Shown piece by piece: positions 2,496-64,000 of a DNA stretch of 64,000 nt. Position numbers and translations under genes: made by a program. This stretch comes from Macrostomum lignano. Its lineage: Eukaryota. Every line of letters begins with the position of its first letter. Positions within the stretch are counted from its first letter, which is position 1. A model generated the notes under the pieces. It saw only the letters and a program-made list of their open reading frames with translations. It did no database searches and was not told where the DNA came from. Where the stretch lies: NCBI GenBank assembly GCA_002269645.1, contig NIVC01000068.1, positions 558,001 through 622,000 of the forward strand, in the 5' to 3' direction.

Positions 2496-4410
<1,915 letters not shown>

Positions 4411-4479
4411 CTGTAGATAAGCAGGGAAACGGGGATTTTGGAGGCTTGGTAGTAAAGTGTACGTTAAGGATAAGGTCTG

Positions 4480-6400: not shown

Positions 6401-6604
6401 AGATTATACACCACAATAATTACACAAACTTAACCAAACAGAAAATTACCACCGGATGAATTATTGACTATAATAATTCAACATTGAAATCAGGTGGCTA
6501 GATATACATGTATGAATTTTGGACAAAATCGCCAGAAAATGGCCAACTTTAAGTACATTTGGAAGAGAGCGTTCTGCATTTCAAACGATTAATAAATTTA
6601 TAGA

Positions 6605-10855: not shown

Positions 10856-11079
10856 GGTGCCGAGACTGACAACTCTATATTATCTAGTTGCTAAAGGCAC
10901 ACACACCTGTGCAGCTGGTCACCCTGACGCTTTCAATCTCTTTGCACTCTTGAACATTCAGAATGCTGGCTTCGATATATTTTATGATCCGACTGTTATT
11001 AAGCAGGATTCTGAAGTCATGAATTGGATGTTAATAAAAGTAGCTTTGATAGAATCCACCTCAAATTATCTATAGAATA

Positions 11080-28597: not shown

Positions 28598-28864
28598 TAG
28601 AGTTTTGATTTTTATAGGTAGAGATTATTTAGTATCTAATATAATGTACCATTTTGCTAGGGGTCAAATTATATTAAATTTTTAAGCTTTTTGAGATTCA
28701 ATATTTTTGACAATACAATATAAGATTTGATCAAGACTGAGCTTTTGGAGTTTCTTAATTTTGATTTGTATCTTTACTAAAATAAGCAAGTTTTTGGCAT
28801 TAATTTTTATTAAACCTTAAAAATAAATTTTCCTTGTTATTAGAATGATATGCAAGATATGAAC

Positions 28865-29965
28865 ATATAAGAGCCACCATGTCAAACAAAAAAGAGCCAC
28901 CATGTCAAACATAGAGCCACCATGCCAAACATAAAAGAGCCACCATGTCAAACATAAAAGAGCTACCATGTCAAACATAAAAGAGCCACCATGTCAGACA
29001 TAAGAGAGCCATCATGTCAAACATAAAAAGTGATCATGTCAAACATATACGTGACTCCATGTCAAACATCAAAGAGCCACCATGTCAGACATAAAAGAGC
29101 CGTCATGTCAAACATAAAAAGCCATCATGTCAAACATATACGTGACTCCATGTCAAACATAAAAGAGCCATCATGTCAAACATAAAAGAGCCACCATGTC
29201 GAACATAAGAGCCACCATGTCGAACATAGAAGAGCCACCATGTCAAACATTAAAGAGCCACCATGTCGAACATTAAAGAGCCACCATGTCAAACATAAAA
29301 CAGCCACCATTTCGAAAATTAAAGAGCTGCCATGTCAAACATTAAAGAGCCACCTTGTCAAATATTAAAGAGCCACCATTTCAAACCTAAAAGAGGCACC
29401 ATATCGAACATTAAAGAGCCACCATGTCGAACATACAAGAGCCACCATGTCAAACATAAAAGAGCCACCATGTCAAACATAAAAGAGCCACCATGTCAAA
29501 CATTAAAGAGCCACCATGTCAAACAAAATAGAGCCAACATGAAGAACATTAAAGAGCCACCATGTCGACCATTAAAAGAGCCACCATGTCGAACATACAA
29601 GAGCCACCATGTCAAACATAAAAGAGCCACCATGTCAAACATAGAAGAGCCACCATGTCAAACATTAAAGAGCCACCATTTCAAACATTAAAGAGCCACC
29701 TTGTCAAACATTAAAGAGCCACCATTTCAAACCTAGAAGAGCCACCATGTCGAACATAAAAGAGCCACCATGTAGAATATAAAAGAGCCACCATGTAGAA
29801 CATAAAAGAGAAACCATGTCAACCCGAAAAGAGCCACTATGCCTAACATAAAAGAGCCATGTCTAACATAAAAGAGCCACCATGTCAAACATGGAAGAGC
29901 CACCATGTCAAACATAAAAGAGTCACCATGTCCAACATAGAAGAGCCACCATGTCAAACATTAAA
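28865..29965. repeat. 23-bp minisatellite (ATAAAAGAGCCACCATGTCAAAC)
   Basis: About 47 diverged units. Confidence 0.95.
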
Positions 29966-30054
29966 GATATACTATTTTAAATGTAAAGGTATAAAGCGCC
30001 ATGCCAATATAAAGGAGCCACTATAAAGCTAAGGAAATTGTTGCACTAGCTACT

Positions 30055-31125
30055 TATTGTCTGGTGGATGCTTGCTATCTGAGGGATGCCTGCTATTTGG
30101 GGGATGCTTGCTATTTGGGGATGCTTGCTATTTGGGGGATGCTTGCTATCTGAGGGAGGCTTGCTATCTTGGGGATGCTTGCTATCTGGGGGATGCTTGC
30201 TATCTGGGGGATGCTTGCTATCTGGGTGATGCTTGCTATCTGGAGGATGCTTGCTATTTGGGGGATGCTTGCTATCTGGGGAATGCTTGCTATCTGGGTG
30301 ATGCTTGCTATCTGGAGGATGCTTGCTATTTGGGGGATGCTTGCTATCTGGGGGATGCTTGCTATCTGGGTGATGCTTGCTATCTGGAGGATGCTTGCTA
30401 TTTGGGGGATGCTTGCTATCTGGGGGTGCCTGCTATCTGGGGGATGCTTGCTATCTGGGGGATGCTTGCTATCTGGAGGATGCTTGCTATTTGGGGGATG
30501 CTTGCTATCTGGGGGATGTTTGCTATCTGGGGGATGCTTGCTATCTGGGGGATGCTTGCTATCTGGGCGATGCTTGCAATCTGGGGGATGCTTGCTATCT
30601 GGGGGATGCTTGCTATCTGGGGGATGCTTGCTATCTGGAGGATGCTTGCTATCTGGGGGATGTTTGCTATCTGGGGGTGCTTGCTATCGGGGGGTGCTTG
30701 CTATCTGGGGGTGCTTGCTATCTGGTGGTGCCTGCTATCTGGGGGTGCTTGCTATCTGGGGTGCTTGCTATCTGGGGGTGCCTGCTATCTGGGGGTGCCT
30801 GCTATCTGGGGGTGCTTGCTATCTGGGGGTGCTTGCTATCTGGGGGATGCTTTCTATCTAGAGGATGCTTGCTATTTGGGGGATGCTTGCTATCTGGGGA
30901 ATGCTTGCTATCTGGGTGATGCTTGCTATCTGGAGGATGCTTGCTATTTGGGGGATGCTTGCTATCTGGGGGATGCTTGCTATCTGGGTGATGCTTGCTA
31001 TCTGGAGGATGCTTGCTATTTGGGGGATGCTTGCTATCTGGGGGTGCTTGCTATCTGGGGGTGCTGCTATCTGGGGGTGCTTTCTTTCTGGGGGTGCTTG
31101 CTATCTGGGAGGAGGGGGGATGCTT
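30055..31125. repeat. 18-bp minisatellite (GATGCTTGCTATCTGGGG)
   Basis: About 60 units; source of the GDACYL/GMLAIW ORFs. Confidence 0.96.
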
Positions 31126-44240: not shown

Positions 44241-44439
44241 CTGTTGCAATTTTCTCCAGTTTTGCTGATCATCCATCCTCAGCTGGTCACTCAAACACTC
44301 TTTCATCGCCCCGACGACATCGGCAGCTTCAACAAGTGGCCCGGAGATACATAGAACACCCAGCCCTGTTGCAAATTTCTTAGATAAGCCTTATCCTAAC
44401 CACTGTGCTTGTCCCCTCGTGCTAAGGACCCTGGTGTTA

Positions 44440-46435
44440 AAGCCCCTGGTGTAAGCCCCTGTCGCTAAAGACCCGGGTGCTAAAGACCAGGGTGCTAAAC
44501 CCCCTGGTGTTAAAGCCCCTGGTGCTAAAGCCCCTGGTGCTAAAGCCCCTGGTGCTAAAGACCCTGGTGCTAAAGACCAGGGTGCTAAACCCCCTGGTGT
44601 TAAAGCCCCTGGTGCTAAAGCCCCTGGTGCTAAAGCCCCTGGTGCTAAAGACCCTGGTGCTAAAGACCCTGGTGCTAAAGACCCTGGTGCTAAAGACCCT
44701 GCTGCTAAAGACCCTGCTGCTAAAGACCCTGGTGCTAAAGACCCGGGTGCTAAAGACCCGGGTACTAAAGACCCTGGTGCTAAAGCCCCGGGTGCTAAAG
44801 ACCCTGGTGCTAAAGCCCCTGGTGCTAAAGACCCTGCTGCTAAAGACCCTGCTGCTAAAGACCCTGCTGCTAAAGACCCTGATGCTAAAGACCCTGGTGC
44901 TAAAGACCCGGGTGCTAAAGACCCGGGTGCTAAAGACCCGGATGCTAAAGACCCGGGTGCTAAAGACCCTGGTGCTAAAGACCCTGCTGCTAAAGACCCT
45001 GGTGCTAAAGACCCTGGTGCTAAAGACCCGGGTGCTAAAGCCCCTGGTGCTAAAGACCCGGGTGCTAAAGCCCCTGGTGCTAAAGACCCTGGTGCTAAAG
45101 ACCCTGCTGCTAAAGACCCTGGTGCTAAAGACCCTGCTGCTAAAGACCCTGGTGCTAAAGACCCTGCTGCTAAAGACCCGGGTGCTAAAGACCCGGGTGC
45201 TAAAGCCCCTGGTGCTAAAGCCCTTGGTGCTAAAGACCCTGGTGCTAAAGCCCCGGGTGCTAAAGACCCGGGTGCTAAAGACCCGGATGCTAAAGCCCCG
45301 GGCGCTAAAGCCCCGGGCGCTAAAGACCCTTGTGCTAAAGACCCTGCTGCTAAAGACCCTGCTGCTAAAGACCCTGGTGCTAAAGACCCTGCTGCTAAAG
45401 ACCCTGCTGCTAAAGACCCTGCTGCTAAAGACCCGGGTGCTAAAGCCCCGGGTGCTAAAGCCCCGGGTGCTAAAGACCCGGGTGCTAAAGACCCGGATGC
45501 TAAAGCCCCGGGCGCTAAAGACCCTGGTGCTAAAGACCCTGATGCTAAAGACCCAGGTGCTAAAGACCCAGGTGCTAAAGACCCAGGTGCTAAAGACCCA
45601 GGTGCTAAAGACCCAGGTGCTAAAGACCCAGGTGCTAAAGACCCTGGTGCTAAAGACCCTGATGCTAAAGACCCTGATGCTAAAGACCCAGGTGCTAAAG
45701 ACCCAGGTGCTAAAGACCCTGGTGCTAAAGACCCAGGTGCTAAAGACCCTGGTGCTAAAGACCCAGGTGCTAAAGACCCTGGTGCTACCCTGGTGCTAAA
45801 AACCCAGGTGCTAAAGACCCTGATGCTAAAGACCCTGATGCTAAAGACCCTGATGCTAAAGACCCAGGTGCTAAAGACCCAGGTGCTAAAGACCAAGGTG
45901 CTAAAGACCCTGGTGCTAAAGACCCGGGTGCTAAAGACCCGGGTGCTAAAGACCCGGGTGCTAAAGACCCGGGTGCTAAAGACCCGGGTGCTAAAGACCC
46001 GGGTGCTAAAGACCCGGGTGCTAAAGACCCGGGTGCTAAAGACCCGGGTGCTAAAGACCCTGGTGCTAAAGACCCGGGTGCTAAAGACCCGGGTGCTAAA
46101 GACCCGGGTGCTAAAGACCCGGGTGCTAAAGACCCGGGTGCTAAAGACCCGGGTGCTAAAGACCCTGATGCTAAAGACCCTGATGCTAAAGACCCTGATG
46201 CTAAAGACCCAGGTGCTAAAGACCAAGGTGCTAAAGACCCTGCTGCTAAAGACCCGGGTGCTAAAGACCCGGGTGCTAAAGACCCGGGTGCTAAAGACCC
46301 GGGTGCTAAAGACCCGGGTGCTAAAGACCCGGATGCTAAAGCCCCGGTGCTAAAGACCCTGGTGCTAAAGACCCGGGTGCTAAAGACCCGGATGCTAAAG
46401 ACCCTGGTGCTAAAGACCCTGCTGCTAAAGACCCT
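44440..46435. repeat. 2-kb 15-bp minisatellite (GGTGCTAAAGACCC[T/G/A])
   Basis: About 130 units; generates the long GSLAP/VLKT ORFs. Confidence 0.97.
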
Positions 46436-48902: not shown

Positions 48903-51900
48903 ATGAAGGGGAAGGCACATCAAGCACATCAGCCAACTGCACCGATCCATGCCTTGAAGCAGTTCTGCCAGTACACTACGGCGCACGGCCTTGGTCGGTT
49001 CCGTTCGCAGAGCAGCGCCTATGGTCGCGTCATTTGGTTGGCCTTTCTAATTGGCACCTACAGCGGTTTTGCTTATCACATGTACACCCTATTCGACAGG
49101 TTCTTCAGCCTGCCGCTGCTTACCACCCTGACCACGTCGCTGGCCTATCGCTTCCCGGATGTGTACATCTGTCCAAACGACGCTTTGTCAATTAGCAAGC
49201 TCACGGACAGCTCAGCAGCACCGGAACTCAACTCCCTGCTCAACTGCGATACCAACTGCAAGTTGAACTTTCTGGTATTCGACATTGCCAACGCGGATCC
49301 AAGCACAGGGTGGAAGCGACCGCGGCTTGGCCAGCCAGCCCTGGCCCTGTCGGACACTCTGGCCGCCATTGAGACCGGACTCACGCACGAGTTTCGCTTC
49401 ATCATGCAGAAAGAAGGTTAGTTAAGGTACTTTGTTGACGTGTAAATGTTAAAATGAATCTCTGAAGATACACTTCGAGAACAAAAAATATACGATTCTT
49501 TACCGCACCCAGCCATGTCTAAGAAATTCGAGTGCAGCGTCCTTCTACTAAGGTTGTCCCTGGGTCGCGGGCTCCTGAAGAATAATACTTAGCTAGCTAT
49601 TTTCGAAGGGCCCTCGGCAGTAGTTTCAACGCGCTGATGGATGCTGTAAACCATATTTTATTCTACATTCAGAAACCTTGCAATGTCCTTGGGCACATGG
49701 TCCACAGTTCTGGGGCTGGTCTTGCGCCTCCTCCACAGTTGCAAATGAGGCTATGGGCCAAATTGAGGCTTGTTGGACCAAATTAAATGCTGCTGTGTCA
49801 GCCTTGCTACCATAGACAAAAGCTACGTGACATTGGCGAACGTATCTTGGATTAAATTCAGTGCGCATAAGCCCAAATGGACTGAAAAAGATATATTTAC
49901 ATTACTGCTACAGTCTATTGTCCGGTAGATTTCTGAGATTAAAACTTAATGTTCATCTTACATAATACGTTTTTATTTCAAGTTAAAAAAATGAAGTTAG
50001 TGACAAGAAAAAAACAAGAAAAAATTGTGTTTAAATGCCTTTGTTAAAAACGAAACACCTTAAAACGCTAGGTGAAATTCTTAAACTTGGTTTCAATGAT
50101 GTTTTAAATGAGGAAAATGATGCAACTAGCTCGTAGAACCCATTTTAGAATAGCATAAGAACTAAAATAATTGAACCTAAATAATGTCCGGAATGAAACG
50201 AAATTAAACGAACATAACGACATCATGACATTCCGCCCTGTACAGTTACCTCATGTACCAACTCCATCGACCGTGGCTGCTTGCCCAACGATCTATTCAA
50301 CCTTGGTTGGATTTGATTTAATAAAGTTTGTGCCCGTCGAAGGCTACAAGCGTATATGTTTAGTCAAGACGAGTGCGTTGAAAGGTCAGACTGGACCCAT
50401 AGAATCTTGTCGTAAAATAACATTTTCACATACTGATCGGTCGAACTTGCGGCTAGAAATAGTATAGCATTTTTCAAGCTATTTGAGCCTAGGAGCAAGC
50501 AATTTAATCCTTAGTGGAAAATCAAGCTATTGAAGACATGTTTTTCATTGTCTATGGCCCGAAAGGGGGTCTATGGAGCAACCAATTTGAGAATCTGGGC
50601 GCGAAATTAATCCTTTTCACAGTGCTCGTATATCTTTCACGAATAACTTCACTGAAATAACGTCTGCAAATAGATGGCATATCAAAAAACGATTGACATT
50701 AGCACTTTGATTTCATAGAAACCAATCAAAACAGGCCCGTGATTTCATAGCGACGCCTGATAGAATACACAGTTTTTCTCTTTACGTCCAGCCATCGCGA
50801 AATGTGCTCAGCACTATCACCTCTCTCGATGGCAGCGACAATCAGGTCGAACTTTTCGTTGCTTATCTTGCGATAGGGTTCTTGCCCTGCAGGATTCTTC
50901 TCATCCACTGCATCTTGGGCTGTAGCAGAACTTTGTCACTGCTTTTCTCGCTAAATTCTTCGTCTGCCATATCCATGTTTGTCTAATGAAATCTGTTGTT
51001 TTCTATGGTCTAAGGCTTGCACAACTACGGAAAGGATTAAAAGCGCCCAGGTTCTCAAATTGGTTGCTCCACAGACCCCCCTTTGGGCCATAGACGATGA
51101 AAAGCAAGTCTAAAATAGCTTGATTTTCCCACCAAGGCTCAATTGGCGTGAAAAATGCTATACTAGATTAACCATTTTAAATGCGTGCATAAATTTTCGG
51201 CTGTAGTGTAACAGAATTAGCATGCTTCCATGGGTTGACCTATTCTAGCCGGGAGAAAAGCACCACAAATTAAGTGGCACAGCAGCACTCTAAATATTGT
51301 TAAATTTCCGCCACTGGAGGGTCCCACGAGAATCAATAATTATTATTAATAGCCGGCCTATTTTGTTTCCTGGCTAGATAATAAAGTTACATAATAGTAG
51401 ATGGACAGCTTGAGTTCAGTTTTTTTAGCTCACGCAAGGCAGCCAAAAACGCTGCTGAGCAAACAGAGGCCAGAGGCAAATAAAAGGGCGAGGGTGACGA
51501 CCCCAGCCAGTCCACCATTCCAATGCACTTAGAGCCAAACCAACGCCGTAACTTCTAAAGCGGTCCTTGATCCCAACAACAGCTGTGTTTTCTGAACCAA
51601 TTTTGTTAAGATTTGCTTTATTGTTTGGGTTTCCTCATAGAGAGACTTGTTCTTAGAAAAAGAAGATAGGAGATAGGCCTGCTAGTCGTTGGTCGGTCGC
51701 ATTTCAAAAAAAAATAGCTTGATGAACTTGTGAGTGCACTTCGGACAAAACACTTGCTAACCTTCTTTGGAATACAGAAGTCCAGCATTTGGGATATTGT
51801 TAAGCTCTCCTTGGCAGCAACAACCGGTCTCCATTGAGTTGTCCATATACATGTAGTGACTCTGCATGCATTTCCTTAGTAGAAAAATTGCGTTCTCAAA

Positions 51901-54900
51901 CAGTTGATTTAAGGTTGATTGATAACCAATCGATTGGTTCTCTCTCATTGAATTAATACAATTAAATTGCACAGCTTCGTCCAGATCTATGGGTCAGAAC
52001 TGCCGCTTCACGGCTACCGGCGAGGAGTACTCTGGCAGCGTGGACGCAGCCGCCGTGTACTCTGATAGCTTCCTGACCGCGCCTGTCGATCGCACGCAAC
52101 AGCCTGATAACCAATCGACCTCGGATTTCGTGGCATCATTTCTGAATCGGCCAAGATGCCTGGCCTGGAGCGAGGCGGCTCGAAGGCTTGAACAAGTCCA
52201 AGGCCAGTTTCAGTCGTCTGCCCGACTGCTGGCGGAACGCATCCGGGCTTTGAACCTGTCGAATGAAGACAGACGATGTCGGAAACCCCCCGGACTGTCT
52301 CTGCAGAGCCTGCGTGATCTCGGAGTTGCTACGTGTAAGTTGCAGCTGGCAGACTCATGGTGTTGCGGATCTGTTGAATGTCGCTTATAGATTTTTGCAG
52401 TTACGTTTGTTTAGTACATGTAGGTTGGTTTTAGACACTGAGAGCAAGGGGTTCCATGTGTTCTCATATGACCTCCGAGCAACCAGGCTCCCGTACTTCT
52501 GAACTCTTATAGTAATACTAGGAACATTTCTTAAGCAGATACATAGAACCTTAGAGAATCGTTCACACTGACATCAACTGAGTCATGAATCATAGGTCGT
52601 ACCATTAATGTATATAAAAGAAATATATGTACAAGCCGTGTGATTTTGCAAAATCAGGGATAAATGGCCAGATATGCAACCGACAGCTCAGCCGCAGCTA
52701 TTGCGCGTCGCATCTGAAGGCTGCGTACGGCTGTTCAGTCCAAGGACTGGGGGGTCGCCACACACACAGCCTCAATTACCCCAGCTAATGCTGGCACCTA
52801 TTTTACAACTGGGTGAACTGAAGCAATACAGAGTTAATTGTGTCTTACTCAAGGACACAAATTGTTCCTAGTGGGTCGAGAAACTAAGCCCCGACCTTTC
52901 AGTCAATTGAGTCCGACGCTATAACCCCTCTAGGTCTCATTATGCTGTTGACAAACGTTAACTATAGTTACCTTTACGAGGTAATGATTATACTGAAAAG
53001 CGATCTTTGTTTTAATTTACAAATCGAAATTACAAGAAAATACAGAACTTATTTTGAATGCTTCGTTCGCTTATCCGTTTATCAGGAAGTCTTTCTTTAA
53101 CATATTTTAACGACAGACTCTGCTAGAAAGTACATCGGGTGCTTCTCGAAAAAATTTGCACTGAGCCGATTCCACCAAATGATGGACTGTTTTGATCAGC
53201 CAGCGAGATTTCTGTCACCGGAATTGTGCCAAAAGTGCTGCTATCGGAGAAACTTTACCCACATGGCGCTCGATCAGCAAATCTGTCTGTGTAGCTCGCT
53301 ATCTGATGCCGAAGATGATTATCAGCTGCTCAAACCGGTGCGAAATTCTAAGCCGGAGAAGTGCTCAACTTTTTGCGGTGGCGGCAACGGACCTGGCGTC
53401 TACTGCGGTGGTGGAGACAATTTCACCAGCGTTTACCGGATTCGCGAGTCGGGTGAGTCGCTTCCATATGCTTGGAATTTTAGAAACATTTTCGAAAACC
53501 CCTGTTAGTCACTTCCGCTAGCTCACAGCTGACGAGCTACACTAATTCGAAAATAAAATTTACACCTGTTCCAATCGAGCCAGATGTGCAACCGACAGCT
53601 CAGCCGCAGTTATTGCCCGGCGCATCTGAAGGCTGCGTACGGCTGTTCAGTCCAAGGACTGGGGGCCGCCACACACCCTCAATTACCCCAGCTAATGCTG
53701 GAACCCGTTTCACAGCTGGGTGAAGTGAAGCAATGCAGAGTTAAATTCCTTTCTCAAGGACACAAATTGTTCCGAGTGGGTCAAGAATCGAACCCCCAAC
53801 CTTTCAGTCGTGAGTCCGATACTCTAACCACTGGACTATAACCCCCCTCCCCCCCAATTAGATAATATTATACATGTATATCCAATAAATATTATTGCGA
53901 AAATATCACATTATAATTTAAAAAAGAAAACTAATAATCTAAAAAACGAAAACTGATCTATCTGCACATGCATGCCGTGACAACTACAGTATAGCAGAAC
54001 TCTACACCTGTTAATTGTTCAAATTTCAAGGGTTTGACCTAATGTCAAACTGCTAGCTTGCGATCCCCTATTTCTTCAGCTTGGAATCCGGTGTTTATTC
54101 CGCTCCGACCGGAAGCTGTTACATTTTTTGATGGCCCTTTCTGCTTCTACGACAGTGCACATGGACTCATGGCGGCTGCTAGCTGCAACATCCCCTACTG
54201 TGGTGAGTATGCTGAGTCTTCGGCCATGGGCTGCTCCAATCCAAAATTTTTATCAAATATTTGTTTTCAGAATGGATAGTCGTGTAGTGTAGATGTAGGG
54301 GCGCCGTATCCCTGTGCTCTGATATGCCAGCGGCCCAGGCTCGATTCCAAGTGCAGTTGCATTAATTTTCGGGCTAAATTGGAATTTCGGCTTGGCTCTG
54401 CTCATGGAATTAGCGCCCTTGAGGGCCAACCCCCAAGGCACAGTGAAGTGTACATGCCTAACGATAAATAAAGTTAGGGCCGCTGTACACTCCTGTGTGA
54501 GTGTGTGCCTGCGCGTATGACTGCAGACGTATCCGCGCGCTTGTACCCTTAGTACACTTACTACAATGTACCCAATCCTTACTCAGGCATACCAACAAAG
54601 TACGACTGCAGCATTAGCAGCAGTTTGGCTGGTACAAGAGCCGCCAAATCAGAGATCGACCACTTCAGCCATTACACTGGAGCGGCGAACCGAACCATGA
54701 CGGCAAGGCGCTGCCTAACCTGGGCTGATGTCAAGACAAATCTGGAATCCGGAGTCTGGAAAATCCTTGCCAACAATGCAGGGGGTCACGAATCGGCGCC
54801 TTGGTTCCGGCACGACCTGCCGTTTAGCAGTGAGTCCAGTGCATGCGGCTAGTGGGTGAGCAAGAAGGACGACTTCAGAAAAAAGACAAAGAAATTTGTT

Positions 54901-57900
54901 GCTTTTAAAAACTGCTTTTTTTCATGGGTTTTTGCAAAGCTTACTTTGTAATTGACTTTAGTGATTGTATAGTATGAGTTTGCACATATTCGGCTCACTT
55001 TTTATTTCGACCTGCTTATCGGGGGGAGGCCGTAGCCTGGCGGTCTAGCACGGCGCTCTGATGTGGCAGTGGTCCGGGCTTGACCCCAAGTACAGTCACG
55101 TTAATTTGGGGCTAAATTGGAACCTCGGCTTGGCTCTGCTCGTGCAATTAACGCACTTGAGGACCAACCCGGAACAGGAAAGTGTACATAGTAACTGATT
55201 ACACCTGCCCCATCTCACATCTGAAGGCTGCTTACGGCTGTTCAGTCCAAGGACTGGGGGTTCGCCACACTCACCCTCAATTACCCCAGCTATGCTGGCA
55301 CCCATTTTACAGCTGGGTGAACTGAAGCAATGCAGAGTGTCTTGCTCAAGGACACAATTTTTCCGAGTGGATCGAGAATCGAACCCCCGACCTTTCAGTC
55401 GTGAGTCCGACGCTCTAACCAATAGGCTACAGCGTTCCGGGCTTGACCCCAAATGTACTTTGTGTCCTTGACCCCCCGTGTACATGCCTAACGATAAATA
55501 AAGTTAGTGTCGCTGTACACTTCCGTGTGAGTGTGTGCCTGTGTGTATGACTGCAGACGTATATGCGCGCTTGTGTGCCTGCTCAGGGGAGTCGGTAGAA
55601 TGGGCGGGCAGTTGGCTGACAATGTTGCTTAAAGTGCGCCAGGGTGCAACATAGCCTTTTGCCTCTAATAAGAAATGCAATGTTTCACGCTACAGTAGTA
55701 TATTTTTCGTTGGGATTAGTTTTCATTATTTACCCATCAGCTTTATTAATCAGTCTAGCTATTTGATATAGTTTAATTGCTAAAATCTACATTTCTAAGA
55801 AATTATGTTTCCCGTTGAAAGGGAAAGAGCTCTGATTCAACTGTTGTTGTTGCCGACCCAGCTTGGTAACTGGTCGTTGGATCACCATGCAGGAGCCGAC
55901 TGGCTGCAACACGGCACAACTAGAAGCCACCTTTCCACTCGCTAGACAGATTCCAGTGCCAATACTTGACTCAGCTGCAGGGGGCTTCGTGCGTCTGGAA
56001 ACAGCGAGGAGGCGTTGCCGCACACTTTGCTAACCTCTGGCGACCACGGGCAGCTAGTGCTGCGGTGTCGCGCAGGGAGTTCCGGTGGTGCCGGTGTCTG
56101 CAGCGCGGTCCCCCTCCGGAGAGTCCAGAAGGTGGATGGTCGCTTGCCCGGTAGCCCTTAGGGTAGCGGACGAGCTGGCAGAGATTCTCGGGCCTGAAAA
56201 CGTCGGAGAGGTCCGGGTTTGGGCCGAGGTAGGTGAGCCTGTCCTGAGTAAACAGATGAAGGCATTCCCAGATGAAGTGCTCCGCATTCTCGACACCGGA
56301 GAGGCAGAATGGGCATTCCTCACTGCCGATCTCACTGACGATGCCTGGCAAAACAGCCATTACCGAGAGGGCCATGGTCACCGACCTGATGTCCCTGCAG
56401 TTGAGTCCAAGCAGGGGGCGGCCGACCTTACGCGCTACTTTTGAAATTCCAGCATTGGCGGCCAGCAGAGCTGGAGGTGCCTAACGAGTGCTTGAGACTG
56501 GTCCCAGAGGCCTACTGGACGTGGCGAACTTTAATACGGCTTCATGGAAATGATCGGCGTGAACGTTATTCGATGCTACCGGTTATCATTTTAAAACTCT
56601 TTAAAAACTGTAAACATACTGTAGATCAATAATGTTTTTGCACAGTTGTTCTCTTAGCAGTGTGGCCGTTTGTGTCCTCGCACTTCTCTGCTATGCAATG
56701 CATTAGCTATACAAGGGCTGAGAACACTTCTTATCACGGCTTCATCGGACATTCGCTTCGCGTCTTTAAATTAGAAATTTCCTAGCCAGTTATTTCTGAT
56801 CCCTATGGAGGATTTTCTTATCTGTTTTTTTAGGCAGAATAAATAAATGTAGCCATTAAGTCTTTTCGTGTTTCCCAATATGGCTGAATATAGCGAATAT
56901 ACTCGAATTGGATATTGTAAACCTTCAAGCGGAAGCTCTTGTAGGTTTCGTTCAGAAAACTTCCGTTCAGAATTCAATCAGATGGCCTCGCGTTTTTTAT
57001 TCCTGATGCTCTTTGGAATTAAAAAAATGGAATCTCCTTTCTTGTTTTTCAGTCAGAACATACCGAGTGCTCAACGTGCACATCGACATGCCCGACTTTG
57101 AGACGAGCAGCCAGCACAGCTTCTGTCGCTCTGTCATGGTTGTGATTGAAACTCTCTACACCCTGAGTAATGGCAGTCAGGTATTCCGGTGAGTTGCAAT
57201 TTGAACCAGGCCTTCTGGTCCTTTACTGTAACTAGACTTTAATTTTCCTGATTCCCGAATCCCTTGCAGCCGAGAGCCATTCCTCAGTTCAAGCAGGCCC
57301 GGCTGTTTCACACAAAAACATGGATATTTAGCCTTCGAGGAGTGCGAGATCGACAACTGCTGTAAGATTTTGTCTCTGAACAATATTTGACTGTTTCTAA
57401 TGGGAGTCATTATCACGCATTAGGCACCTGAGCACACCCACAAGAAGGATACAAGAAGCATACTAAAATGTTGAGTTCAGTATCTTAGAGACTTAGACGC
57501 TATTTTTTGAGAAAGTGATAGAACTTTTCATGAATTAAATAAAAAGCTACTTAATAAAACTAAGAACGATGCATGTACTGTAGAGACTACTCACGAAATT
57601 GAGTTCAGTAGTTGATTTTGATGTAACCGCCCTTGTCGCCCTCCGCTCCGTTGAGAAACGAACGCATGACCAGAGGGGGCAATGACCGTAGGCTGCCTAT
57701 GACCGGGCAATGACCTGACGGACCTCCAGCACCAGACTGTCCCGCCCACATGATTGATAGCTTTGGTAGCGCTTTCGTGACCAGAGGGCCAAGGACCCAC
57801 ATGGACCCCACCTGTAGCCAAGGTGCAATAGTTGGTCACTCGGTCAGAGCATGACCGAGTGGCTGCCACCACTCTAAGTGACCTGGCGCACCTGGATCTC

Positions 57901-60900
57901 ACTACCAGACCTCTCGAGGCTAGAGCCCCGCCTGGATTGGTTACCAGGGGATTTAGGCTAACAGGGGAGACACATGCAGCCGAGTACAGGGACTCTGCCT
58001 GGGGCATGATCGGGAACTCTGGGCTCAATCTGGAGGATTTCTCAGCAGGGGATCCTTTGTGGCTGTGAGCGAGGCTGACTTGCGGCTTTGATTACTAAGA
58101 GTAGTGTGAGGCGAACATGTACTGTCTATAGTTTAGATTGCTCAGGGCGAAGGGACGCGTCAGCATGGGGTTGCAACATTCCTACTGCCATTCTGTGCCA
58201 AGACTCGCTAATCCCCTCTACTGCACGCACACACGGCCCCGCAGCACGCACTCACAGGCGAGCTTTGCACGGGGAGAGGCCATTAGCTTACCCAAACTTC
58301 CTTATGCTTAGCCACCCAGGGAGAAGGCTTAGCAAGCCATGAGTGAAATGATGGTGAAAGTGTGAATAATGAGGAGTTTAGTAATGGTTAATAATTAGGC
58401 CCTTAGGCAAAATAATCAGGCAATTAGGCGACTTCACTATTGAATAAATACAGCAAATAATACGGTATCACAATTGGCTCAGCTCTCTAATCAAGCAATG
58501 GAAAATAGGCAAACCCCGGATAAGCAAGGCAATTAGAGCACAAATTAGTAACAGGAACTTACCGGCAGCTGCACAGAGAGAGAGAGAGAGAGAGAGAGAC
58601 GGAGTGACCGTGGGCGGCTGTTGGCTGCAGTCAGGCAGACTGTGAAGCGGCGATGCGCTGAAGCGGTGAGGCGCGGATGTAGTTCAGGCGATGCTGAAGA
58701 TGCTGTGCGGTACCAGACCGCGGACCGGCAGGTGAGCTCACTTGGGGAGCTGAGGTAACTTGGCGGTAACAGACCGCGGACCGGCAGAGGTTCGTCCTAT
58801 AGACGAATGGGTCAGATCAGTGTCTGACAGCAAGTCCAAAGAAGGACGAGGAGACGAAGATGTTGAGGATTCTCATGCCGAAAACCGCTTCCTTAAATAG
58901 CCTTCCCAGCCGCCGCTCCAAGATCGTTTCCATGACTCACTCTCTCTGATTGGCTGCCGGCAGAATGACGTCATAATGAGTCATGATGAGAAGCATGAGA
59001 ACGGCATAGCAACATGAGAAATGGGAAAATTGCGCAATCTGGGAGGAGGGGTGGGGGATAATTGGCGCAGCGGGAAGTCGCGAAAGTGTTGCACATGCAA
59101 ACATTGAGAACAATGGGGCTGGGGTCGAGAACAAAGGAAATAGAAATCGAGGATAATTGGGGAGAATCGAGAACAATAGAAAAGTAAACATTGGAGAAAA
59201 GGTGCTAATGGGGTGCGAAAACAAGAACAAAAGAAAGAGAAAATCCTGGAAAATGTGATAATTGGGTGCGAAAGGAGAACAAAAGAATCAAAAACGAGAA
59301 CAATAGAAGCGGAGGTGAGGTGGGTGCCGCATGAGAAATTTGGGGAGGAGAACAATGGCATGAGAAAATGTTGCGCAAGAGGGGGTGGTGTGAGTCATCG
59401 ATGAGTCATCGAGAGGAAAGAGGGGTCACAAGACTTGCGTCACCGTTTGGGAGTTTCAGTAGGAATGGGGTGACGGTGAGCGCACAAAGTACTGTCAGTA
59501 GATGCCAAAAGAAGGAGGGACAGCGCAGGAAAACAGTGCAAAAAGAGAAAAAAGATGGGAAGCGGGAAAAGTGCAAGATAGATAGGGTAAAGCGCATGAG
59601 AAATAGGGTAGCGGGTGAGGTACAGAGAGAGGTAGGGGCTCTGGAAAGGCATGTGTGGCGGCGCGGGAGACGGAGCCGAGGCAGCAAGGGGATGCAGCAG
59701 AGCGGGAGTCAGCAGGCCTGGTCAAAGACCTGGCCCAGTCTCGACGGCTCTGCTCAGGAGGTGCACGGAGATCGGAGGTACTTTTGAAAAATGTCCCCTA
59801 CCGTATCCCGCGACCAGAGCGTGGTTACATCAATTTTCGCAAAGTTTTTTACATTGGCTTTTATGGCCACATAAGTGGTTAATGAGTGCGTATATATGAT
59901 CTTTGGCTGTAGCTCATAGACGTTCAGTGCAAGTCTGGGAGTGCAATAAGCACTATGTTTGCTTTTTTGGCATTCTATGCCAGATTATTAAAATTTACTA
60001 CTCTTTTACTTACATAACAGCATTTTTTAAATTAAAACTCAGCGGATAATTATAGCCTGCTTTGTTATTACAACTTATTACTATTTTTTTAATAGTCCGG
60101 ATATCCAGATTGTGCTTCTGAGCAATCTAAATCTACAATCTCATGTCCAGATCACGCGGTGCCGAGTGTCACAGCCTCGCTGCGGGACTCTCTCGGAACT
60201 GCACTGCTGTCCAGGCAGTTCAGCAGCGGACTCGCCACCTCGCTGTCCAAATGCGTCTTTGGCGATCGCGCATGCGACAGGAGCCACTTCATGACCATGG
60301 TTCATCCAGAGTTGGGCCTGTGCCACAAGTTCAACTACGAAGCGTTTGCTAGCACAGGCAGTGGCACCTTGGCCAAGCTGTCAATCAAATACTTCTCGGA
60401 CAAGATGGACTCGTTCGGTCATTCGTACGAGAACTCCAGCAAGCTGGCTTACGCTGTACGCGACACTCGGCACAGGTCGGAGTCGCAGAGCGCTCTAAAA
60501 GTAGGTGCTGGACTTGCTTTGCAGTATATCTGTCGTATGTAGATAAGACCACTTTCCAGGTCTCTCTTAGTGTTTTATCTGACTGTTGACAGGAGTTCTT
60601 TATCTGACAAAAGTCATAAGTAGCAGTATGAGCAGCAGCAAGGTCCACGGGCCTCATGTGACCCGCAAAGCCTCTCTATCGGGTCTTTTGAAACTTCACA
60701 ATAGCAATCCGGCCCGCTCAAGGTTTGTGTCTCTTCTCAGCTCTCTTCTTTCTAATCTAAAAGCTTCTCTTTTCTCTCCTCTCCTCTCCTCTCCTCTCCT
60801 CTCCTCTCCTCTCCTCTCCTCTCCTCTCCTCTCCTCTCCTCTCCTCTCCTCTCCTCTCCTCTTCTCTTCTCTTCTCTTCTCTTCTCTTCTCTTCTCTCCT

Positions 60901-63215
60901 CTCCTCTCCTCTCCTCTCCTCTCCTCTCCTCTCCCTTCCTCTCCTCTCCTCTCCTCTTCTCTTCTCTTCTCTTCTCTTCTCTTCTCTTCTCTTCTCTTCT
61001 CTTCTCTTCTCTCCTCTACTCTCCTCTCCTCTCCTCTCCTCTCCTCTCCTCTCCTCTCCTCTCCTCTCCTCTCCTCTCCTCTCCTCTCCTCTCCTCTCCT
61101 CTCCTCTCTCTTCTCTTCTCTCTCCTCTTCTCTTCTCTTCTCTTCTTCTCTTCTCTTCTCTTCTCTTCTCTTCTCTCTCTCTCTCTCTCTCCTCTCCTCT
61201 CCTCTCCTCTCCTCTCCTCTTCTCTTCTCTTCTCTTCTCTTCTCTTCTCTTTCTCTTCTCTTCTCTTCTCTTCTCTTCTCTTCTCTTCTCTCTCTCTCTT
61301 CTCTTCTCTTCTCTTCTCTTCTCTTCTCTTCTCTTCTCTTCTCTCCTCTCCTCTCCTCTCCTCCCTTCTCCTCTCTATTCTCCTTTCTTATCCTCTTGAT
61401 ACTTTCTACCGCTTTGAAGATTTACTCCGGTTATATTTTATTTTGTTGCTATCTGACAATACAGTTGTAGTCTTATATGAACTCGAATATGATTTTATAA
61501 CGAATTACGAATTACTCGTAAAACCTTTCAAGGTTATTGTGGTTCCACCTGGAGCATATCCCTGGACAAAAGAGGCCGTTCCTGTGTACCCTGGACAGCA
61601 CGTTGAACTAAAGCTAAGATTCGATAAGAGCACTCGCTACTCGAAATCGCCTTATCAGCCATGCACTCAAACAAGAAGCAGTGTGACATATCGACTGGAG
61701 TCTTGGAGTAACAACTACTCAGTGTATGTGTTCAAGTAGGCTCAATCCTTTGTTTAGTTGTGCTGCAACATGGGTTCTAGAATTGGTATATAAAGAAATT
61801 TTAATGGTCCCTGTTATTTACTCGTATGCAAGAGAGGTAGATGGACACGACATAGATACACGTCGTCACTGACACTGAATGTGACTTCTTCGAGCCCGTA
61901 TCAAATCCGAAACTGCTGCAAAACGCAGGGATTGTTTTAACCCTTCTATGGGTTTTTAGATGCTTAAGTAGTCCCTGGTGTAAGGTAATTCTATACTATA
62001 GTATCCCTCATTTCTGTCCTGTTGTCGGGAGAGTACGGGAATGGCTGATGGACTGCGTGGGCCGGATAGAAGCCACACGAAGTTAAGGAATATTAAGCTA
62101 GTGTTCGGGCCTGAGGACGGGGCTCTATTTGGAGGAGGGACACATTAGACCGCCAGCCAATCGCAGGGCGAACGAGGGGCGCACTGGGACCGCAGCCAGC
62201 CAAAACCGGCTGGCCCATACAGACAGTGGGGTGGGTGCAGTTGGGGGTCTGACGCAGACAGAATGGGGGGGGGGTTGACGCAAGCACGCGGGCCGGAGGG
62301 GTAGGAGTGCAGTGCCGGGCACACTTGACCGAGAGTCAGAGATTGCTTATCGGTGCAAATGTACCCGAACACAACACAATATAAACAGAATGGTTATCTT
62401 CAAGAAACGAAAAAACAAAAATAATTTCAGACTTTATCCTGAACTGCCAGTCACCTTCGGCGAAATTAACTGGAGAAAAAAGATTACCATACTCGGTGAT
62501 TTATTAAAAAGGATTAGCGACGCGAAGTAAGTGTGTAGCTTAACTTTTAGATTAAAAAGTCTATATTAAAGCAAATAATAACTCTTGAAAAAAAATTGCA
62601 GGGGCCCAATGCAAAGCACCCTTCACTTTCCAATGGCAAGCCGCAGTGACTGCATAAACGACTTTATAGTGAAGAAATTCATCGAGCACTGCGGATGCCT
62701 TCCTTCCGGTCTACCTGTGCAATTGAAACACTTTGACAATCACACGTACTGTTTCAATTTGACTCACTCGCAGCAGCTGTTGGCAATCGAGTCCTGCTAC
62801 CAAGCCCAAGTGGCAAGCATGCCGCAGTACGAGACAGAGGCGCATCGATCCTGCTTGCCCCAGTGCGAGACCCAGCGTTATTCAATTCGGCAATCCTCGC
62901 ATCCGTGGCCTAATTTGCGCCGGGAGACTGCCGTAAAGTTTCTCAAGGTTCTGGCGGAGTTGCACGGCTACCCGGATGAGATGCGATCCACATGGGGCGA
63001 GTCGGCGCTCTACTTCATGTACGAACGGGCCGCTCAGTTGGTTGACCAGAAAAGCTCAGAAAAGTCGGCAGAAGATTGGATTAATTTCTCTCGCCAACTG
63101 GAAGCTTTGCAAGACCAACTGGCCATGGTTAGCGTGCAGGGCAGGCAACCGTTTGGTGAAGAAACTTTCGAGGAAGAGGCCTATCCAACCAAGAACTTGC
63201 TGGCGGATGTTGGAG
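48903..63215 (+). CDS. DEG/ENaC (amiloride-sensitive sodium channel family) subunit, 3'-partial; core exons 48903-49416, 60109-60534, 61465-61723, 62641-63215; probably also the six kringle/WSC exons at 51975-57361
   Basis: YTTAHG gating motif, TM1, FPDVYICP, SKCVFGDRAC...LGLCHKFN, YPW...PGQH...PYQPC, CINDFIVKKFIEHCGC, CLPQC, pre-TM2 LLADVGG followed by a phase-1 donor; TM2 exon not found in window. Confidence 0.88.
50462..51163 (-). mobile_element. Internally deleted IS630/Tc1/mariner-type DNA transposon
   Basis: About 150-bp TIRs starting GTATAGCATTTTTCA, TA TSD on both sides, internal HTH remnant (ISNEKFDLIVAAIERGDSAEHISRWLDVKRKTVYSIRRRY). Confidence 0.82.
51975..52334 (+). CDS. Exon encoding the N-terminal part of kringle 1 (Cys1-3)
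   Basis: CRFTATGEEYSG...RCLAWS...RCRKP; acceptor TTGCACAG, donor GTAAGT, phase 1-1. Confidence 0.8.
52668..52935 (-). mobile_element. tRNA-derived SINE family 1
   Basis: Match to other copies. Confidence 0.85.
53117..53452 (+). CDS. Exon encoding a WSC domain
   Basis: YIGCF...LSPELCQKCC...MAL...ICLC...KCSTFCGG...YCGG...SVYRI; 8 canonical Cys; phase 1-1, donor GTGAGT. Confidence 0.87.
53568..53838 (-). mobile_element. tRNA-derived SINE family 1
   Basis: Match to other copies. Confidence 0.85.
54080..54202 (+). CDS. Exon encoding the C-terminal part of kringle 1 (Cys4-6)
   Basis: DGPFCFY...SCNIPYC; acceptor TTTCTTCAG, donor GTGAGT, phase 1-1. Confidence 0.8.
54290..54545 (+). mobile_element. 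Second dispersed element family (tRNA-like head), copy 1
   Basis: Shares GGCTAAATTGGAA..TCGGCTTGGCTCTGCTC and GTGTACATGCCTAACGATAAATAAAGTTAG with 55020-55570. Confidence 0.7.
54587..57361 (+). CDS. Kringle 2 over three exons: 54587-54829, 57053-57188, 57270-57361
   Basis: YDC...YTGAANRTMTARRCLTW / HSFCRS / RPGCFT...EECEIDNC; six Cys; phases 1-1, 1-2, 2-1; donors GTGAGT, GTGAGT, GTAAGA. Confidence 0.78.
55020..55570 (+). mobile_element. Second dispersed element family, copy 2, interrupted by a minus-strand SINE family 1 copy (about 55192-55430)
   Basis: Head GCCGTAGCCTGGCGGTCTAG...GGGCTTGACCCC; 3' half resumes after the SINE. Confidence 0.72.
55842..56530 (-). mobile_element. Degenerate 3' end of a non-LTR retrotransposon with (CAA)n tail
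   Basis: GNGCFARH (shifted frame), CPFCLSGVENAEHFIWEC zinc knuckle, tail at 55842-55852. Confidence 0.7.
57619..59832 (-). mobile_element. LTR-like element (probable solo LTR), termini TGATGTAACC...GGTTACATCA
   Basis: 10-bp inverted TG..CA ends; ATTT at 57615-57618 and 59833-59836 as 4-bp TSD; no pol seen. Confidence 0.55.
58890..58985 (-). promoter_or_regulatory. Pol II promoter-like cluster within the LTR-like element
   Basis: Minus strand order: TGACTCA, TGACGTCA, CCAAT, TGAGTCA, then TATTTAAG. Confidence 0.45.
60760..61375. repeat. (CTCCT/CTCTT)n polypyrimidine pentamer tract in a channel intron
   Basis: Directly visible; source of the SSPLL ORF. Confidence 0.96.
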
Positions 63216-64000
63216 GTTTGCAGTTTCTTCCTTCTGATTTGTTTATGCATGCAATTGACGCCGTTTAATTCACATTCCATGGTTAGAATGTCCGAGGACT
63301 TTTTAACGATGAACTTCTATGATGGGTAAAAATGAATCGGTGGTGTGGGGATAGAGCCCCCACTGAGGGTGTTGAGGCGAAGCCCCCACATCCCCCACAT
63401 GTTAACTATAGACTATTAACAGTAGAAAGACCACTCTATTTTTCCCCATGGGGAAAGACCATGGGGTGTATTACAAATACACACAACCAATTTCACCATA
63501 GCTCGCAAACCGAATAACCGATTTTCGTAAAAGTCCTCTATTTGAATCAAAATTTCCCCCTCTTTCTAACGAATTAACTTTCAAAGTCATCCGACGTCAG
63601 CATCGTCGAGATATTCAACGATTCTTGTCGAAGACACTGGTGGCAAGGACAACCAACACTACACTGTATAAACCTTTATGGTGAATCCATATTGGCTCAA
63701 TAATCTGGGTCCATCTGTCGGAGAGGCCTTTCTTCTCAGCATCCCAGGAACTAGGGTCCCCTTCATCACCGTCTGGAGCATCGGCGGCGACCGTCAGGAC
63801 CTTCAACAAAAGCACCCGATCGGCATCGCAGAGACGGCTGCGTTCCCAAAACTGAAATGGAAGAATCCTCTTCTGCATGCAGCATTCAGTCAGTAGACAT
63901 AATCGGTGAATGAAATGGACGACGGCGACCCTCTAGGTTGACCTGTAGACATACAAGCGACCTTCGGGACCTTCAACGGAGTGCCACCACGCGGCCCCAA

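What the first reader, a model, noticed from the sequence alone, without database searches (positions are those of the whole stretch)
51975..54202. WSC domain inserted inside a kringle domain
Seen: kringle Cys1-3 (codons at 52001, 52157, 52277; motifs YSG, CLAW, CRKP) lie in one exon. Cys4-6 (54142, 54184, 54199; GPFCFY, CNIPYC) lie two exons later, and the complete WSC exon sits between them. Knowledge: kringle disulfides pair 1-6, 2-4 and 3-5, so all three would bridge across the WSC domain; in Kremen the two domains are in tandem, not nested. Inference: a domain-within-domain insertion that displays WSC on the kringle C3-C4 loop. Profile searches would probably miss this kringle.
Basis: partly seen in the sequence, partly recalled or inferred. 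Interest (0 to 1): 0.78.

Follow-up and report, generated by a model that had tools for sequence, protein, structure and literature searches.

The report
WSC domain nested in kringle-like domain
A flatworm sodium-channel gene carries, in its outer "finger" region, a very divergent kringle-like domain interrupted by a complete sugar-binding WSC domain, an arrangement that standard annotation does not detect.

Summary
Exons A (51975-52334), B (53117-53452) and C (54080-54202) have canonical splice sites, are all phase 1-1, and read through in frame.

These exons lie inside a DEG/ENaC (ASC) channel gene, between the TM1 exon (48903-49416) and the next channel exon (60151-). A second, uninterrupted kringle-like domain follows in exons D-F.

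The same layout occurs in at least six Macrostomum lignano paralogs, whose annotation is RNA-seq based. One paralog has identical exon phases.

Pfam finds neither Kringle nor WSC in the window's exons. Other tests do support the reading:
- Exon B scores as WSC against a purpose-built WSC HMM, and the paralogs pass Pfam's WSC cut-off at that position.
- The exon C block is clearly homologous to kringle C-halves.
- With WSC removed, the family profile aligns end to end with a kringle profile (91%, P=1e-6).
- Both halves always carry exactly three Cys.

The kringle fold and the cross-domain disulfides could not be confirmed: AlphaFold models are confident, but Foldseek recovers only WSC.

Verdict: a real nested architecture, kringle-derived rather than canonical. 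It is a new variant of a known kind. Its function is inferred only.

The parts
48903..49416 (+). DEG/ENaC (ASC) exon 1: start ATG, 'FCQYTTAHGLGRF', TM1 and 'FPDVYICP'. It ends in phase 1 at donor GTTAGT.
   Evidence: tblastn matches to P0001, P0002 and P0005 at 42-52% identity. Pfam ASC E=1.7e-35 for the spliced model.
51975..52334 (+). Exon A, phase 1-1: the N part of the first kringle-like domain (KL1N). It carries Cys1 (52001), Cys2 (52157, CLAW) and Cys3 (52277, CRKP).
   Evidence: hhalign of the family KL1N against a kringle profile: 39%, P=3e-4, columns 2-57. Against KL2: P=1.3e-4. Three Cys in all six family members.
53117..53452 (+). Exon B, phase 1-1: a complete but divergent WSC domain with 10 Cys (8 canonical plus 2 specific to this family).
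   Evidence: No Pfam hit for the window copy. A WSC HMM built from unrelated WSC domains gives 19.9 bits, p=3e-8, 0/3000 shuffles. The homologous block in paralogs passes Pfam WSC (P0002 41.1 bits, P0005 39.1 bits). The AF2 model of the paralog matches Wsc1 7PZ2 and Kremen1.
54080..54202 (+). Exon C, phase 1-1: the C part of the first kringle-like domain (KL1C). It carries Cys4 (54142, GPFCFY), Cys5 (54184) and Cys6 (54199, CNIPYC).
   Evidence: The equivalent block in P0002 aligns with junctions of true tandem kringles ('GPWCF..W.YCDVPFC'). hhalign 82%, P=1e-5, kringle columns 52-78. The paralog exon is also 123 nt.
54587..54829 (+). Exon D, phase 1-1: the N part of the second kringle-like domain (KL2), with Cys1, 'HYTG' and 'RRCLTW'.
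   Evidence: Third-best kringle-HMM hit among the 1429 six-frame ORFs of the window (9.9 bits).
57053..57188 (+). Exon E, phase 1-2: the middle of KL2 ('MPDFET..HSFCRS', Cys3).
57270..57361 (+). Exon F, phase 2-1: the C part of KL2 ('RPGCF...FEECEIDNC', Cys4-6).
   Evidence: Best kringle-HMM hit in the whole window (14.7 bits). Pfam Kringle E=1.8e-4 for KL2, below the cut-off. hhalign of KL2 against the kringle profile: 95.6%, P=1e-8.
60151..60500 (+). The next DEG/ENaC exon, entered in phase 1 ('YHAVPSVTASLRD...CVFGDRACDRSHF...GLCHKFN'). This resumes the channel ectodomain.
   Evidence: Aligned to FaNaC 207-240 through the paralog P0005.
61527..61718 (+). A further DEG/ENaC exon. Borders are approximate, taken from tblastn.
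62609..63217 (+). A further DEG/ENaC exon, ending '...LLADVGG' just before TM2. Borders are approximate. No TM2 exon was matched inside the window.

Best explanation
The three exons are part of one gene, a flatworm (Macrostomum-type) DEG/ENaC sodium channel.

Between TM1/beta1 and the rest of the ectodomain, where other family members have the small, variable finger domain, six phase-compatible exons encode a Cys-rich cassette of about 430 aa. The cassette begins with a strongly derived kringle-like domain whose Cys3-Cys4 loop is interrupted by a complete WSC domain, encoded by one symmetric 1-1 exon. A second, uninterrupted kringle-like domain follows.

Shown here:
- the gene structure;
- the nesting in the primary structure;
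- its presence in transcript-based paralog proteins;
- the WSC identity;
- kringle ancestry of the C-half and, more weakly, of the N-half.

Inferred:
- The two halves, with 3 Cys each, close around WSC through the kringle disulfides. WSC can sit in a loop because its first and last strands are adjacent.
- The arrangement arose when a 1-1 WSC exon was shuffled into an intron of an already expanded C3-C4 loop.
- The cassette is a ligand-, glycan- or matrix-binding appendage that couples an extracellular partner to channel gating.
For: Gene model:
- Eight exons with canonical AG/GT borders and matching phases give a 718-aa read-through.
- Pfam ASC E=1.7e-35 on the spliced model.

Paralogs:
- Six M. 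lignano proteins, including the full-length P0005 (1052 aa), show the same order: KL1N, WSC, KL1C, KL2.
- The P0005 locus has the same 1-1 exons, including a 123-nt KL1C exon.
- The M. lignano annotation is RNA-seq based (PMC5730564).

WSC:
- Pfam scores above the cut-off in paralogs.
- The window's exon B scores 19.9 bits against a purpose-built WSC HMM.
- Foldseek matches the paralog model to Wsc1 7PZ2 (E=1.5e-5, TM 0.76-0.78) and to Kremen1.

Kringle:
- The KL1C plus KL2N stretch hits true multi-kringle proteins (E about 3e-9 to 5e-54).
- hhalign of WSC-excised KL1 against the kringle profile gives 91%, P=1.1e-6, columns 2-78. The WSC control gives 0.1%.
- KL1 aligns colinearly with KL2, P=8e-6.
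- Cys counts are 3 in KL1N, 3 in KL1C and 6 in KL2 in every member, and 10 in WSC in four of six members, 11 in the other two.

Structure:
- The AF2 model of KL1N-WSC-KL1C is compact and confident (pLDDT 79.5, pTM 0.70).
- In Kremen1, WSC strands beta1 and beta5 are adjacent (PMC5014086).
Against: - Pfam finds no Kringle and no WSC in the window exons. Pfam Kringle on WSC-excised paralog modules reaches at most 14.4 bits against a cut-off of 34.3.
- KL1N alone is only weakly kringle-like (39%). AF2 predicts it to hold two confident helices that are not found in kringles.
- Foldseek gives no significant kringle match for either model.
- The intron in the C3-C4 loop of KL2 is phase 2, while the introns flanking WSC in KL1 are phase 1. 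The simple 'same intron' shuffling story therefore needs an extra step.
- There is no transcript evidence for this particular locus. Its protein is absent from the 15-billion-protein collection.
Confidence: 0.72

Rival explanations
1. Only the C-half is kringle-derived. Exon A would encode an unrelated, partly helical Cys-containing module, making the cassette 'novel module, then WSC, then kringle remnant' rather than a split kringle.
For: - KL1N alone against the kringle profile gives only 39%, P=3e-4.
- AF2 predicts helices at 56-65 and 70-76 with pLDDT about 94.
- Pfam matches only the C-terminal 20-25 residues.
- Foldseek's sole kringle match is 18 residues at E=1.6.
Against: - KL1N matches the correct part of both the kringle profile (columns 2-57) and KL2 (C2 and C3 in register, P=1.3e-4), while the WSC control gives P=0.43.
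- The C..G..Y.G, C..W and CR.P motifs occur in kringle order.
- KL2, which aligns to canonical kringles at all six Cys, is also predicted to have a helix right after C2-W.
- An odd Cys number (3) is conserved in both halves.
Confidence: 0.17
2. The WSC exon is an optional cassette. Because B is a 1-1 exon, skipping it would leave a contiguous kringle-like domain with a 42-residue C3-C4 loop, and that form could be the main product at this locus.
For: - All exons of the cassette are symmetric or phase-compatible.
- KL2 has a 34-residue C3-C4 loop without any insert.
- One M. lignano entry, P0053, lacks the KL1C block, which suggests exon skipping or variable gene models.
Against: - All five paralog proteins spanning the region include WSC between the halves.
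- WSC is well conserved, with its 10-Cys pattern kept in four of six members and 11 Cys in the other two.
Confidence: 0.1
3. The window copy is an unexpressed or decaying paralog, so the nested layout here is a relic rather than a working protein.
For: - Its protein is not in the searched collections.
- Its WSC and KL1 are more divergent than those of the paralogs, with no Pfam WSC hit and extra insertions in KL1N.
- SINE-like copies sit in three of its introns.
Against: - There are no stops or frameshifts in the eight modelled exons (718 codons) or in the two further exon matches, and the eight modelled exons have canonical splice sites.
- Every conserved Cys is retained.
Confidence: 0.12
4. 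A, B and C belong to a separate gene nested in an intron of the channel gene, or the resemblance is chance.
For: The exons lie 2.5 kb after the nearest upstream channel exon and about 6 kb before the nearest downstream one.
Against: - The phases match on both sides.
- Paralog proteins carry the channel N-part, the cassette and the channel C-part in one ORF.
- Shuffle tests were 0/3000.
Confidence: 0.02

Closest known systems
Kremen1/2 ectodomain (Kringle-WSC-CUB)
   Same: It pairs a kringle with a WSC domain in one extracellular unit. In Kremen1 the two pack tightly and together form a ligand (Dkk) interface (PMC5014086). Foldseek matches the paralog model to Kremen1 at E about 1e-4.
   Different: - Kremen has a complete kringle followed by WSC, in tandem. 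Here WSC lies between Cys3 and Cys4 of the kringle-like module.
- There is no CUB domain.
- The host is an ion channel, not a type I receptor.
- The kringle here is far below Pfam's cut-off.
Canonical kringles (plasminogen, apolipoprotein(a), invertebrate multi-kringle proteins such as Darwinula stevensoni P0058, P0062 and P0066)
   Same: - Six Cys in the same order.
- The motifs G..Y.G, C..W, CR.P, GP(W/Y/F)C(F/Y) and C.(I/V)P.C.
- Significant phmmer and hhalign similarity.
   Different: - All loops are expanded: about 150 aa without WSC against about 80 aa.
- Predicted helices follow C2-W.
- The NPD motif and both conserved Trp of the C-half are lost, by inspection.
- A whole domain is inserted.
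- The fold was not recovered by Foldseek.
DEG/ENaC channels with elaborated finger regions (ENaC, FaNaC, ASIC)
   Same: - Pfam ASC is clearly met.
- The nearest solved relatives are FaNaC, ASIC5 and ENaC.
- The cassette sits between the stretches that align to FaNaC 66-155 and 207-240. From my own knowledge of ASIC1 topology, that is the finger position.
   Different: The finger-position segment is about 480 aa in P0005 against about 50 in FaNaC, and it is built from shuffled extracellular modules. I found no paper describing kringle or WSC in a DEG/ENaC channel.
Nested (inserted) domains in general
   Same: One domain is encoded inside a loop of another, and the parent domain is continuous in space but not in sequence.
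   Different: To my knowledge no kringle has been described as a host and no WSC as a guest. Here the parent would have to be closed by all three of its disulfides across the guest.

Membership tests
Kringle (PF00051) | Score at or above Pfam's gathering cut-off (34.3 bits) | tested here: not met
   The window's A+C, A, C and A+B+C give no hit at E<=10. WSC-excised paralog modules reach at most 14.4 bits.
Kringle (PF00051) | Six conserved Cys in kringle order with the flanking motifs (C..G..Y.G, C..W, CR.P, P.C, C.(I/V)P.C) | tested here: met
   Present in the window and in all five paralogs spanning the region. Cys counts are 3+3 in every member.
Kringle (PF00051) | Detectable homology to bona fide kringles over the whole domain | tested here: met
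   hhalign of the WSC-excised family profile against 13 Pfam-validated kringles gives 91%, P=1.1e-6, columns 2-78, with a control at 0.1%. The C-half plus the next N-half hits multi-kringle proteins. The N-half alone is weak (39%).
Kringle (PF00051) | Triple-loop fold with disulfides 1-6, 2-4 and 3-5 | tested here: inconclusive
   The AF2 model of the paralog is compact (pTM 0.70).
WSC (PF01822) | Score at or above Pfam's gathering cut-off (27.8 bits) | tested here: inconclusive
   The window's exon B gives no Pfam hit. The homologous block passes in P0002 (41.1 bits), P0005 (39.1 bits) and P0009 (43 bits). Exon B scores 19.9 bits against a purpose-built WSC HMM, 0/3000 shuffles.
WSC (PF01822) | Eight-Cys pattern and PAN-like beta-sheet/helix fold | tested here: met
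   The pattern is aligned with 24 unrelated WSC domains. The AF2 model of the paralog matches Wsc1 7PZ2 (E=1.5e-5, TM 0.76-0.78), Kremen1 and a WSC-bearing glyoxal oxidase. phmmer matches 7pz2 at E=2e-6.
DEG/ENaC (PF00858, ASC) | Pfam ASC above the cut-off, with the N-terminal HG motif, TM1 and the Cys-rich ectodomain | tested here: met
   The window's spliced model gives E=1.7e-35, 123 bits. Paralogs give 76-131 bits. TM2 lies outside the modelled part of the window.
Kremen | Tandem KR-WSC-CUB ectodomain on a single-pass receptor | tested here: not met
   There is no CUB hit, WSC is nested rather than tandem, and the host is an ASC channel.

The most novel reading that the evidence does not exclude
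A kringle fold is physically closed by its three disulfides around an entire WSC domain, making it the first kringle to act as a host for a nested domain. This composite, together with a second kringle-like domain, replaces the finger of a DEG/ENaC channel and tethers it to an extracellular glycan or matrix partner that gates or tunes the channel. A small Macrostomum-specific channel subfamily has this design.
Probability: 0.3. Interest if true: 0.72.

Novelty: new variant of a known kind. Interest (0 to 1): 0.55.

Why it matters
- It is a clean natural example of exon shuffling placing one disulfide-rich module inside another. It shows that domain annotation misses the host domain entirely: these proteins are named only 'WSC domain-containing protein'.
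- For channel biology, it adds an unexpected modular ectodomain (kringle-like, WSC, kringle-like) at the finger position. In other DEG/ENaC channels, from my own knowledge, that region governs activation by ligands and proteases.
- This gives a testable lead for matrix- or glycan-coupled gating in a tractable flatworm model.
- If the disulfide closure were confirmed, it would also interest protein engineers as a loop-tolerant kringle scaffold.

Tried and rejected
- Pfam on A, B, C, A+C and A+B+C gave nothing relevant.
- phmmer of A+C and of B against PDB sequences found no kringle or WSC.
- The word-indexed homology search with A+B+C found nothing at E<=10.
I therefore used substrings of the M. 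lignano paralogs as proxies.
- Adding kringle N-halves to the AF2 alignment was dropped because MAFFT aligned them onto WSC.
- Foldseek on the KL1N-WSC-KL1C model recovered only WSC and Kremen.
- Foldseek on the KL2 model gave only insignificant RNA-polymerase fragments and no kringle.
- Hits P0011 and P0044 from the exhaustive search look like low-complexity proteins with incoherent Pfam hits and were ignored.
- Literature searches for kringle or WSC in DEG/ENaC channels found nothing on this architecture.
- 'Separate nested gene' and 'chance Cys pattern' were considered and rejected.
- I ran no further search on pinning down the species.
Full report
**1. The observation**

The window is eukaryotic, with introns and SINE-like repeats.
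- Exon A (51975-52334) carries TGC at 52001, TGC at 52157 and TGT at 52277, with the motifs GEEYSG, CLAW and CRKP.
- Exon B (53117-53452) carries a WSC-like Cys pattern: YIGCF...C..CC...FTHMAL...C.C...C...C...CGGG...VYRI.
- Exon C (54080-54202) carries TGC at 54142, TGC at 54184 and TGT at 54199, with GPFCFY and CNIPYC.
- Every border is a canonical AG or GT. All three exons are phase 1-1, and the A+B+C splice gives a 272-aa open frame.

**2.

The exons lie inside a DEG/ENaC (ASC) gene.
- Exon 1 (ATG at 48903, ending at 49416) encodes 'FCQYTTAHGLGRF', TM1 and 'FPDVYICP'. It ends in phase 1.
- The channel resumes at 60151, also in phase 1, and continues at about 61.5 kb and 62.6-63.2 kb.
- Three more exons lie between C and the channel: D (54587-54829), E (57053-57188) and F (57270-57361). 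They encode a second, uninterrupted kringle-like domain, KL2.
- The eight-exon model reads through 718 codons without a stop.
- The spliced product, extended with two further ASC exon matches, scores Pfam ASC at E=1.7e-35.

**3. Relatives**

- The A+B+C product has no match in the word-indexed search.
- The channel exons hit two Macrostomum lignano proteins at 40-46% identity. Both show the same order: KL1N, WSC, KL1C, KL2.
- An exhaustive HMMER search with the cassette of P0002 found complete or partial copies only in M. lignano: P0001, P0005-7, P0009, P0014, P0053 and P0097. Sources name them 'WSC domain-containing protein' or leave them as hypothetical.
- P0005 (1052 aa) is full length. It has TM1, the cassette, the rest of the ectodomain and TM2.
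- Exact spliced mapping of P0005 onto its locus shows the same exon plan: KL1N 303 nt, WSC 300 nt, KL1C 123 nt and KL2-N 195 nt, all phase 1-1.
- The M. lignano annotation was built from RNA-seq (PMC5730564). In paralogs, therefore, the two halves and WSC are in one transcript.
- The window shares a SINE-like repeat with that M. lignano contig. It most likely comes from Macrostomum.
- Its own protein is not in the collections searched.

**4. Is exon B a WSC domain?**

- Pfam does not report it.
- The homologous block passes Pfam's WSC cut-off in P0002, P0005 and P0009.
- Exon B scores 19.9 bits (p=3e-8) against an HMM built from 24 unrelated WSC domains. None of 3000 shuffles reached that score.
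- The AF2 model of the P0005 segment matches the Wsc1 sensor domain (7PZ2; E=1.5e-5, TM 0.76-0.78), Kremen1 and a WSC-bearing glyoxal oxidase.

It is a WSC domain, though a divergent one.

**5. Are A and C together a kringle?**

Pfam Kringle finds nothing in the window's A+C, and it gives at most 14.4 bits on WSC-excised paralog modules against a cut-off of 34.3 bits.
All 13 were then validated by Pfam as Kringle.
- Its HMM scores the window's A+C at 10.4 bits in three colinear pieces (HMM positions 3-15, 21-45 and 58-78). Paralogs score 11.6-14.5 bits, WSC controls score about 0, and none of 3000 shuffles reached the observed values.
- Profile-profile comparison of the six-member family:

| Query | Prob | P | Kringle columns |
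|---|---|---|---|
| KL1 with WSC excised | 91% | 1.1e-6 | 2-78 |
| C-half alone | 82% | 1e-5 | 52-78 |
| N-half alone | 39% | 3e-4 | 2-57 |
| KL2 | 95.6% | 1e-8 | 2-78 |
| WSC control | 0.1% | 0.43 | n/a |

- Independently, the stretch 'KL1C, linker, KL2N' of P0002 hits genuine multi-kringle proteins in the exhaustive search. These include a 31-kringle protein at E=5e-54 and Darwinula proteins at E about 3-8e-9. The alignment runs exactly as a kringle C-half followed by the next N-half.
- KL1 without WSC aligns colinearly with KL2, with C2 to C6 in register (P=8e-6). Each half matches the right part of KL2.
- KL1N and KL1C each have exactly three Cys in all six members, KL2 has six, and WSC has 10 in four of six members and 11 in the other two. 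An odd, conserved Cys count in each half is what inter-half disulfides predict.

**6. Fold**

- The KL1N-WSC-KL1C model of P0005 is confident and compact (pLDDT 79.5, pTM 0.70). It has the expected beta-hairpin in KL1C.
- It also has two high-confidence helices after C2-W, which canonical kringles lack. The first 50 residues are modelled poorly.
- Foldseek recovers WSC and Kremen. For kringles it finds only an 18-residue match to the neurotrypsin kringle at E=1.6.
- The KL2 model (pLDDT 80.9, pTM 0.73) also has a helix after C2-W and a long hairpin in the C3-C4 loop. Foldseek finds no kringle match for it.
- Model coordinates are not exposed, so the predicted disulfides could not be measured.
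- The modules are therefore kringle-derived by sequence. A kringle fold is unproven.
- The nesting is geometrically plausible. In Kremen1, WSC is a beta1-beta5-beta3-beta4-beta2 sheet, so its first and last strands are adjacent. The Kremen1 kringle disulfides pair 1-6, 2-4 and 3-5 (PMC5014086).

**7. How it probably arose and works**

- All cassette exons are phase-compatible, and WSC is a single symmetric 1-1 exon flanked by phase-1 introns. This fits insertion of a shuffled WSC exon into an intron of an already enlarged C3-C4 loop. KL2's loop is 34 residues without any insert.
- One caveat: the KL2 intron in that loop is phase 2, not phase 1.
- Through P0005, the cassette lies between the segments that align to FaNaC residues 66-155 and 207-240. 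From my own knowledge of ASIC1 topology, that is the finger-domain position.
- The classical lysine-pocket residues of kringles are not conserved: NPD is replaced, and both conserved Trp of the C-half are lost (inspection). The kringle-like parts are therefore more likely scaffold than lysine binders. WSC is the likelier binding surface.
- My best guess, as inference only, is an extracellular glycan-, matrix- or protein-binding appendage that modulates gating.

**8. Novelty**

- These proteins are already in public databases, but only as uncharacterised WSC-containing proteins.
- I found no description of a kringle or WSC in DEG/ENaC channels, or of a kringle hosting another domain.
- Domain insertion as such is well known.
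- I rate this a new variant of a known kind, of moderate interest.

Noticed in passing
window 54587-54829, 57053-57188, 57270-57361: A second, uninterrupted kringle-like domain (KL2) directly follows the split one. All six Cys align with canonical kringles. Pfam Kringle gives E=1.8e-4, below the cut-off, and hhalign gives 95.6%. Its C3-C4 loop is expanded to about 34 residues. In the paralog model this loop is predicted to form a long beta-hairpin.
   Followed up: yes
window 48903-63217 (+): The host gene is a DEG/ENaC (ASC) channel. The whole Cys-rich cassette sits at the finger-domain position. No TM2 exon was matched before the window ends.
   Followed up: yes
window 52667-52933, 53579-53838, 55174-55429; L001 1462-1644: Copies of one SINE-like repeat with a tRNA-like end lie in three introns of the gene. 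Related copies elsewhere in the window also match the M. lignano contig NIVC01000440.1 at 70-88% identity.
   Followed up: partly
window, whole (e.g. 397-1300, 28862-29967, 30060-31109, 44414-46435, 60774-61375): The density of minisatellite arrays is very high: 46 TRF rows with score >=200. One array has 135 copies of a 15-nt unit and reads as long open frames in several phases.
   Followed up: no
P0053 (M. lignano, UniRef A0A1I8HMR1): This paralog entry lacks the KL1C block and the Cys1 part of KL1N, so WSC runs straight into KL2. It is either an exon-skipped isoform or a faulty gene model.
   Followed up: no
window 53117-53452 and paralog WSC blocks: The family's WSC has two Cys beyond the canonical eight: 'F..TC' and the middle Cys of 'CxxCC'. 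Both are conserved across members, which suggests a fifth disulfide inside WSC.
   Followed up: partly
window 2499-4479 (-), 6600-10900 (-), 14157-15185 (+): Other coding-looking stretches were seen: exons resembling a fumarylacetoacetate-hydrolase-domain protein, a long coiled-coil protein, and an RNase H/reverse-transcriptase-like remnant next to a 60-nt tandem array.
   Followed up: no
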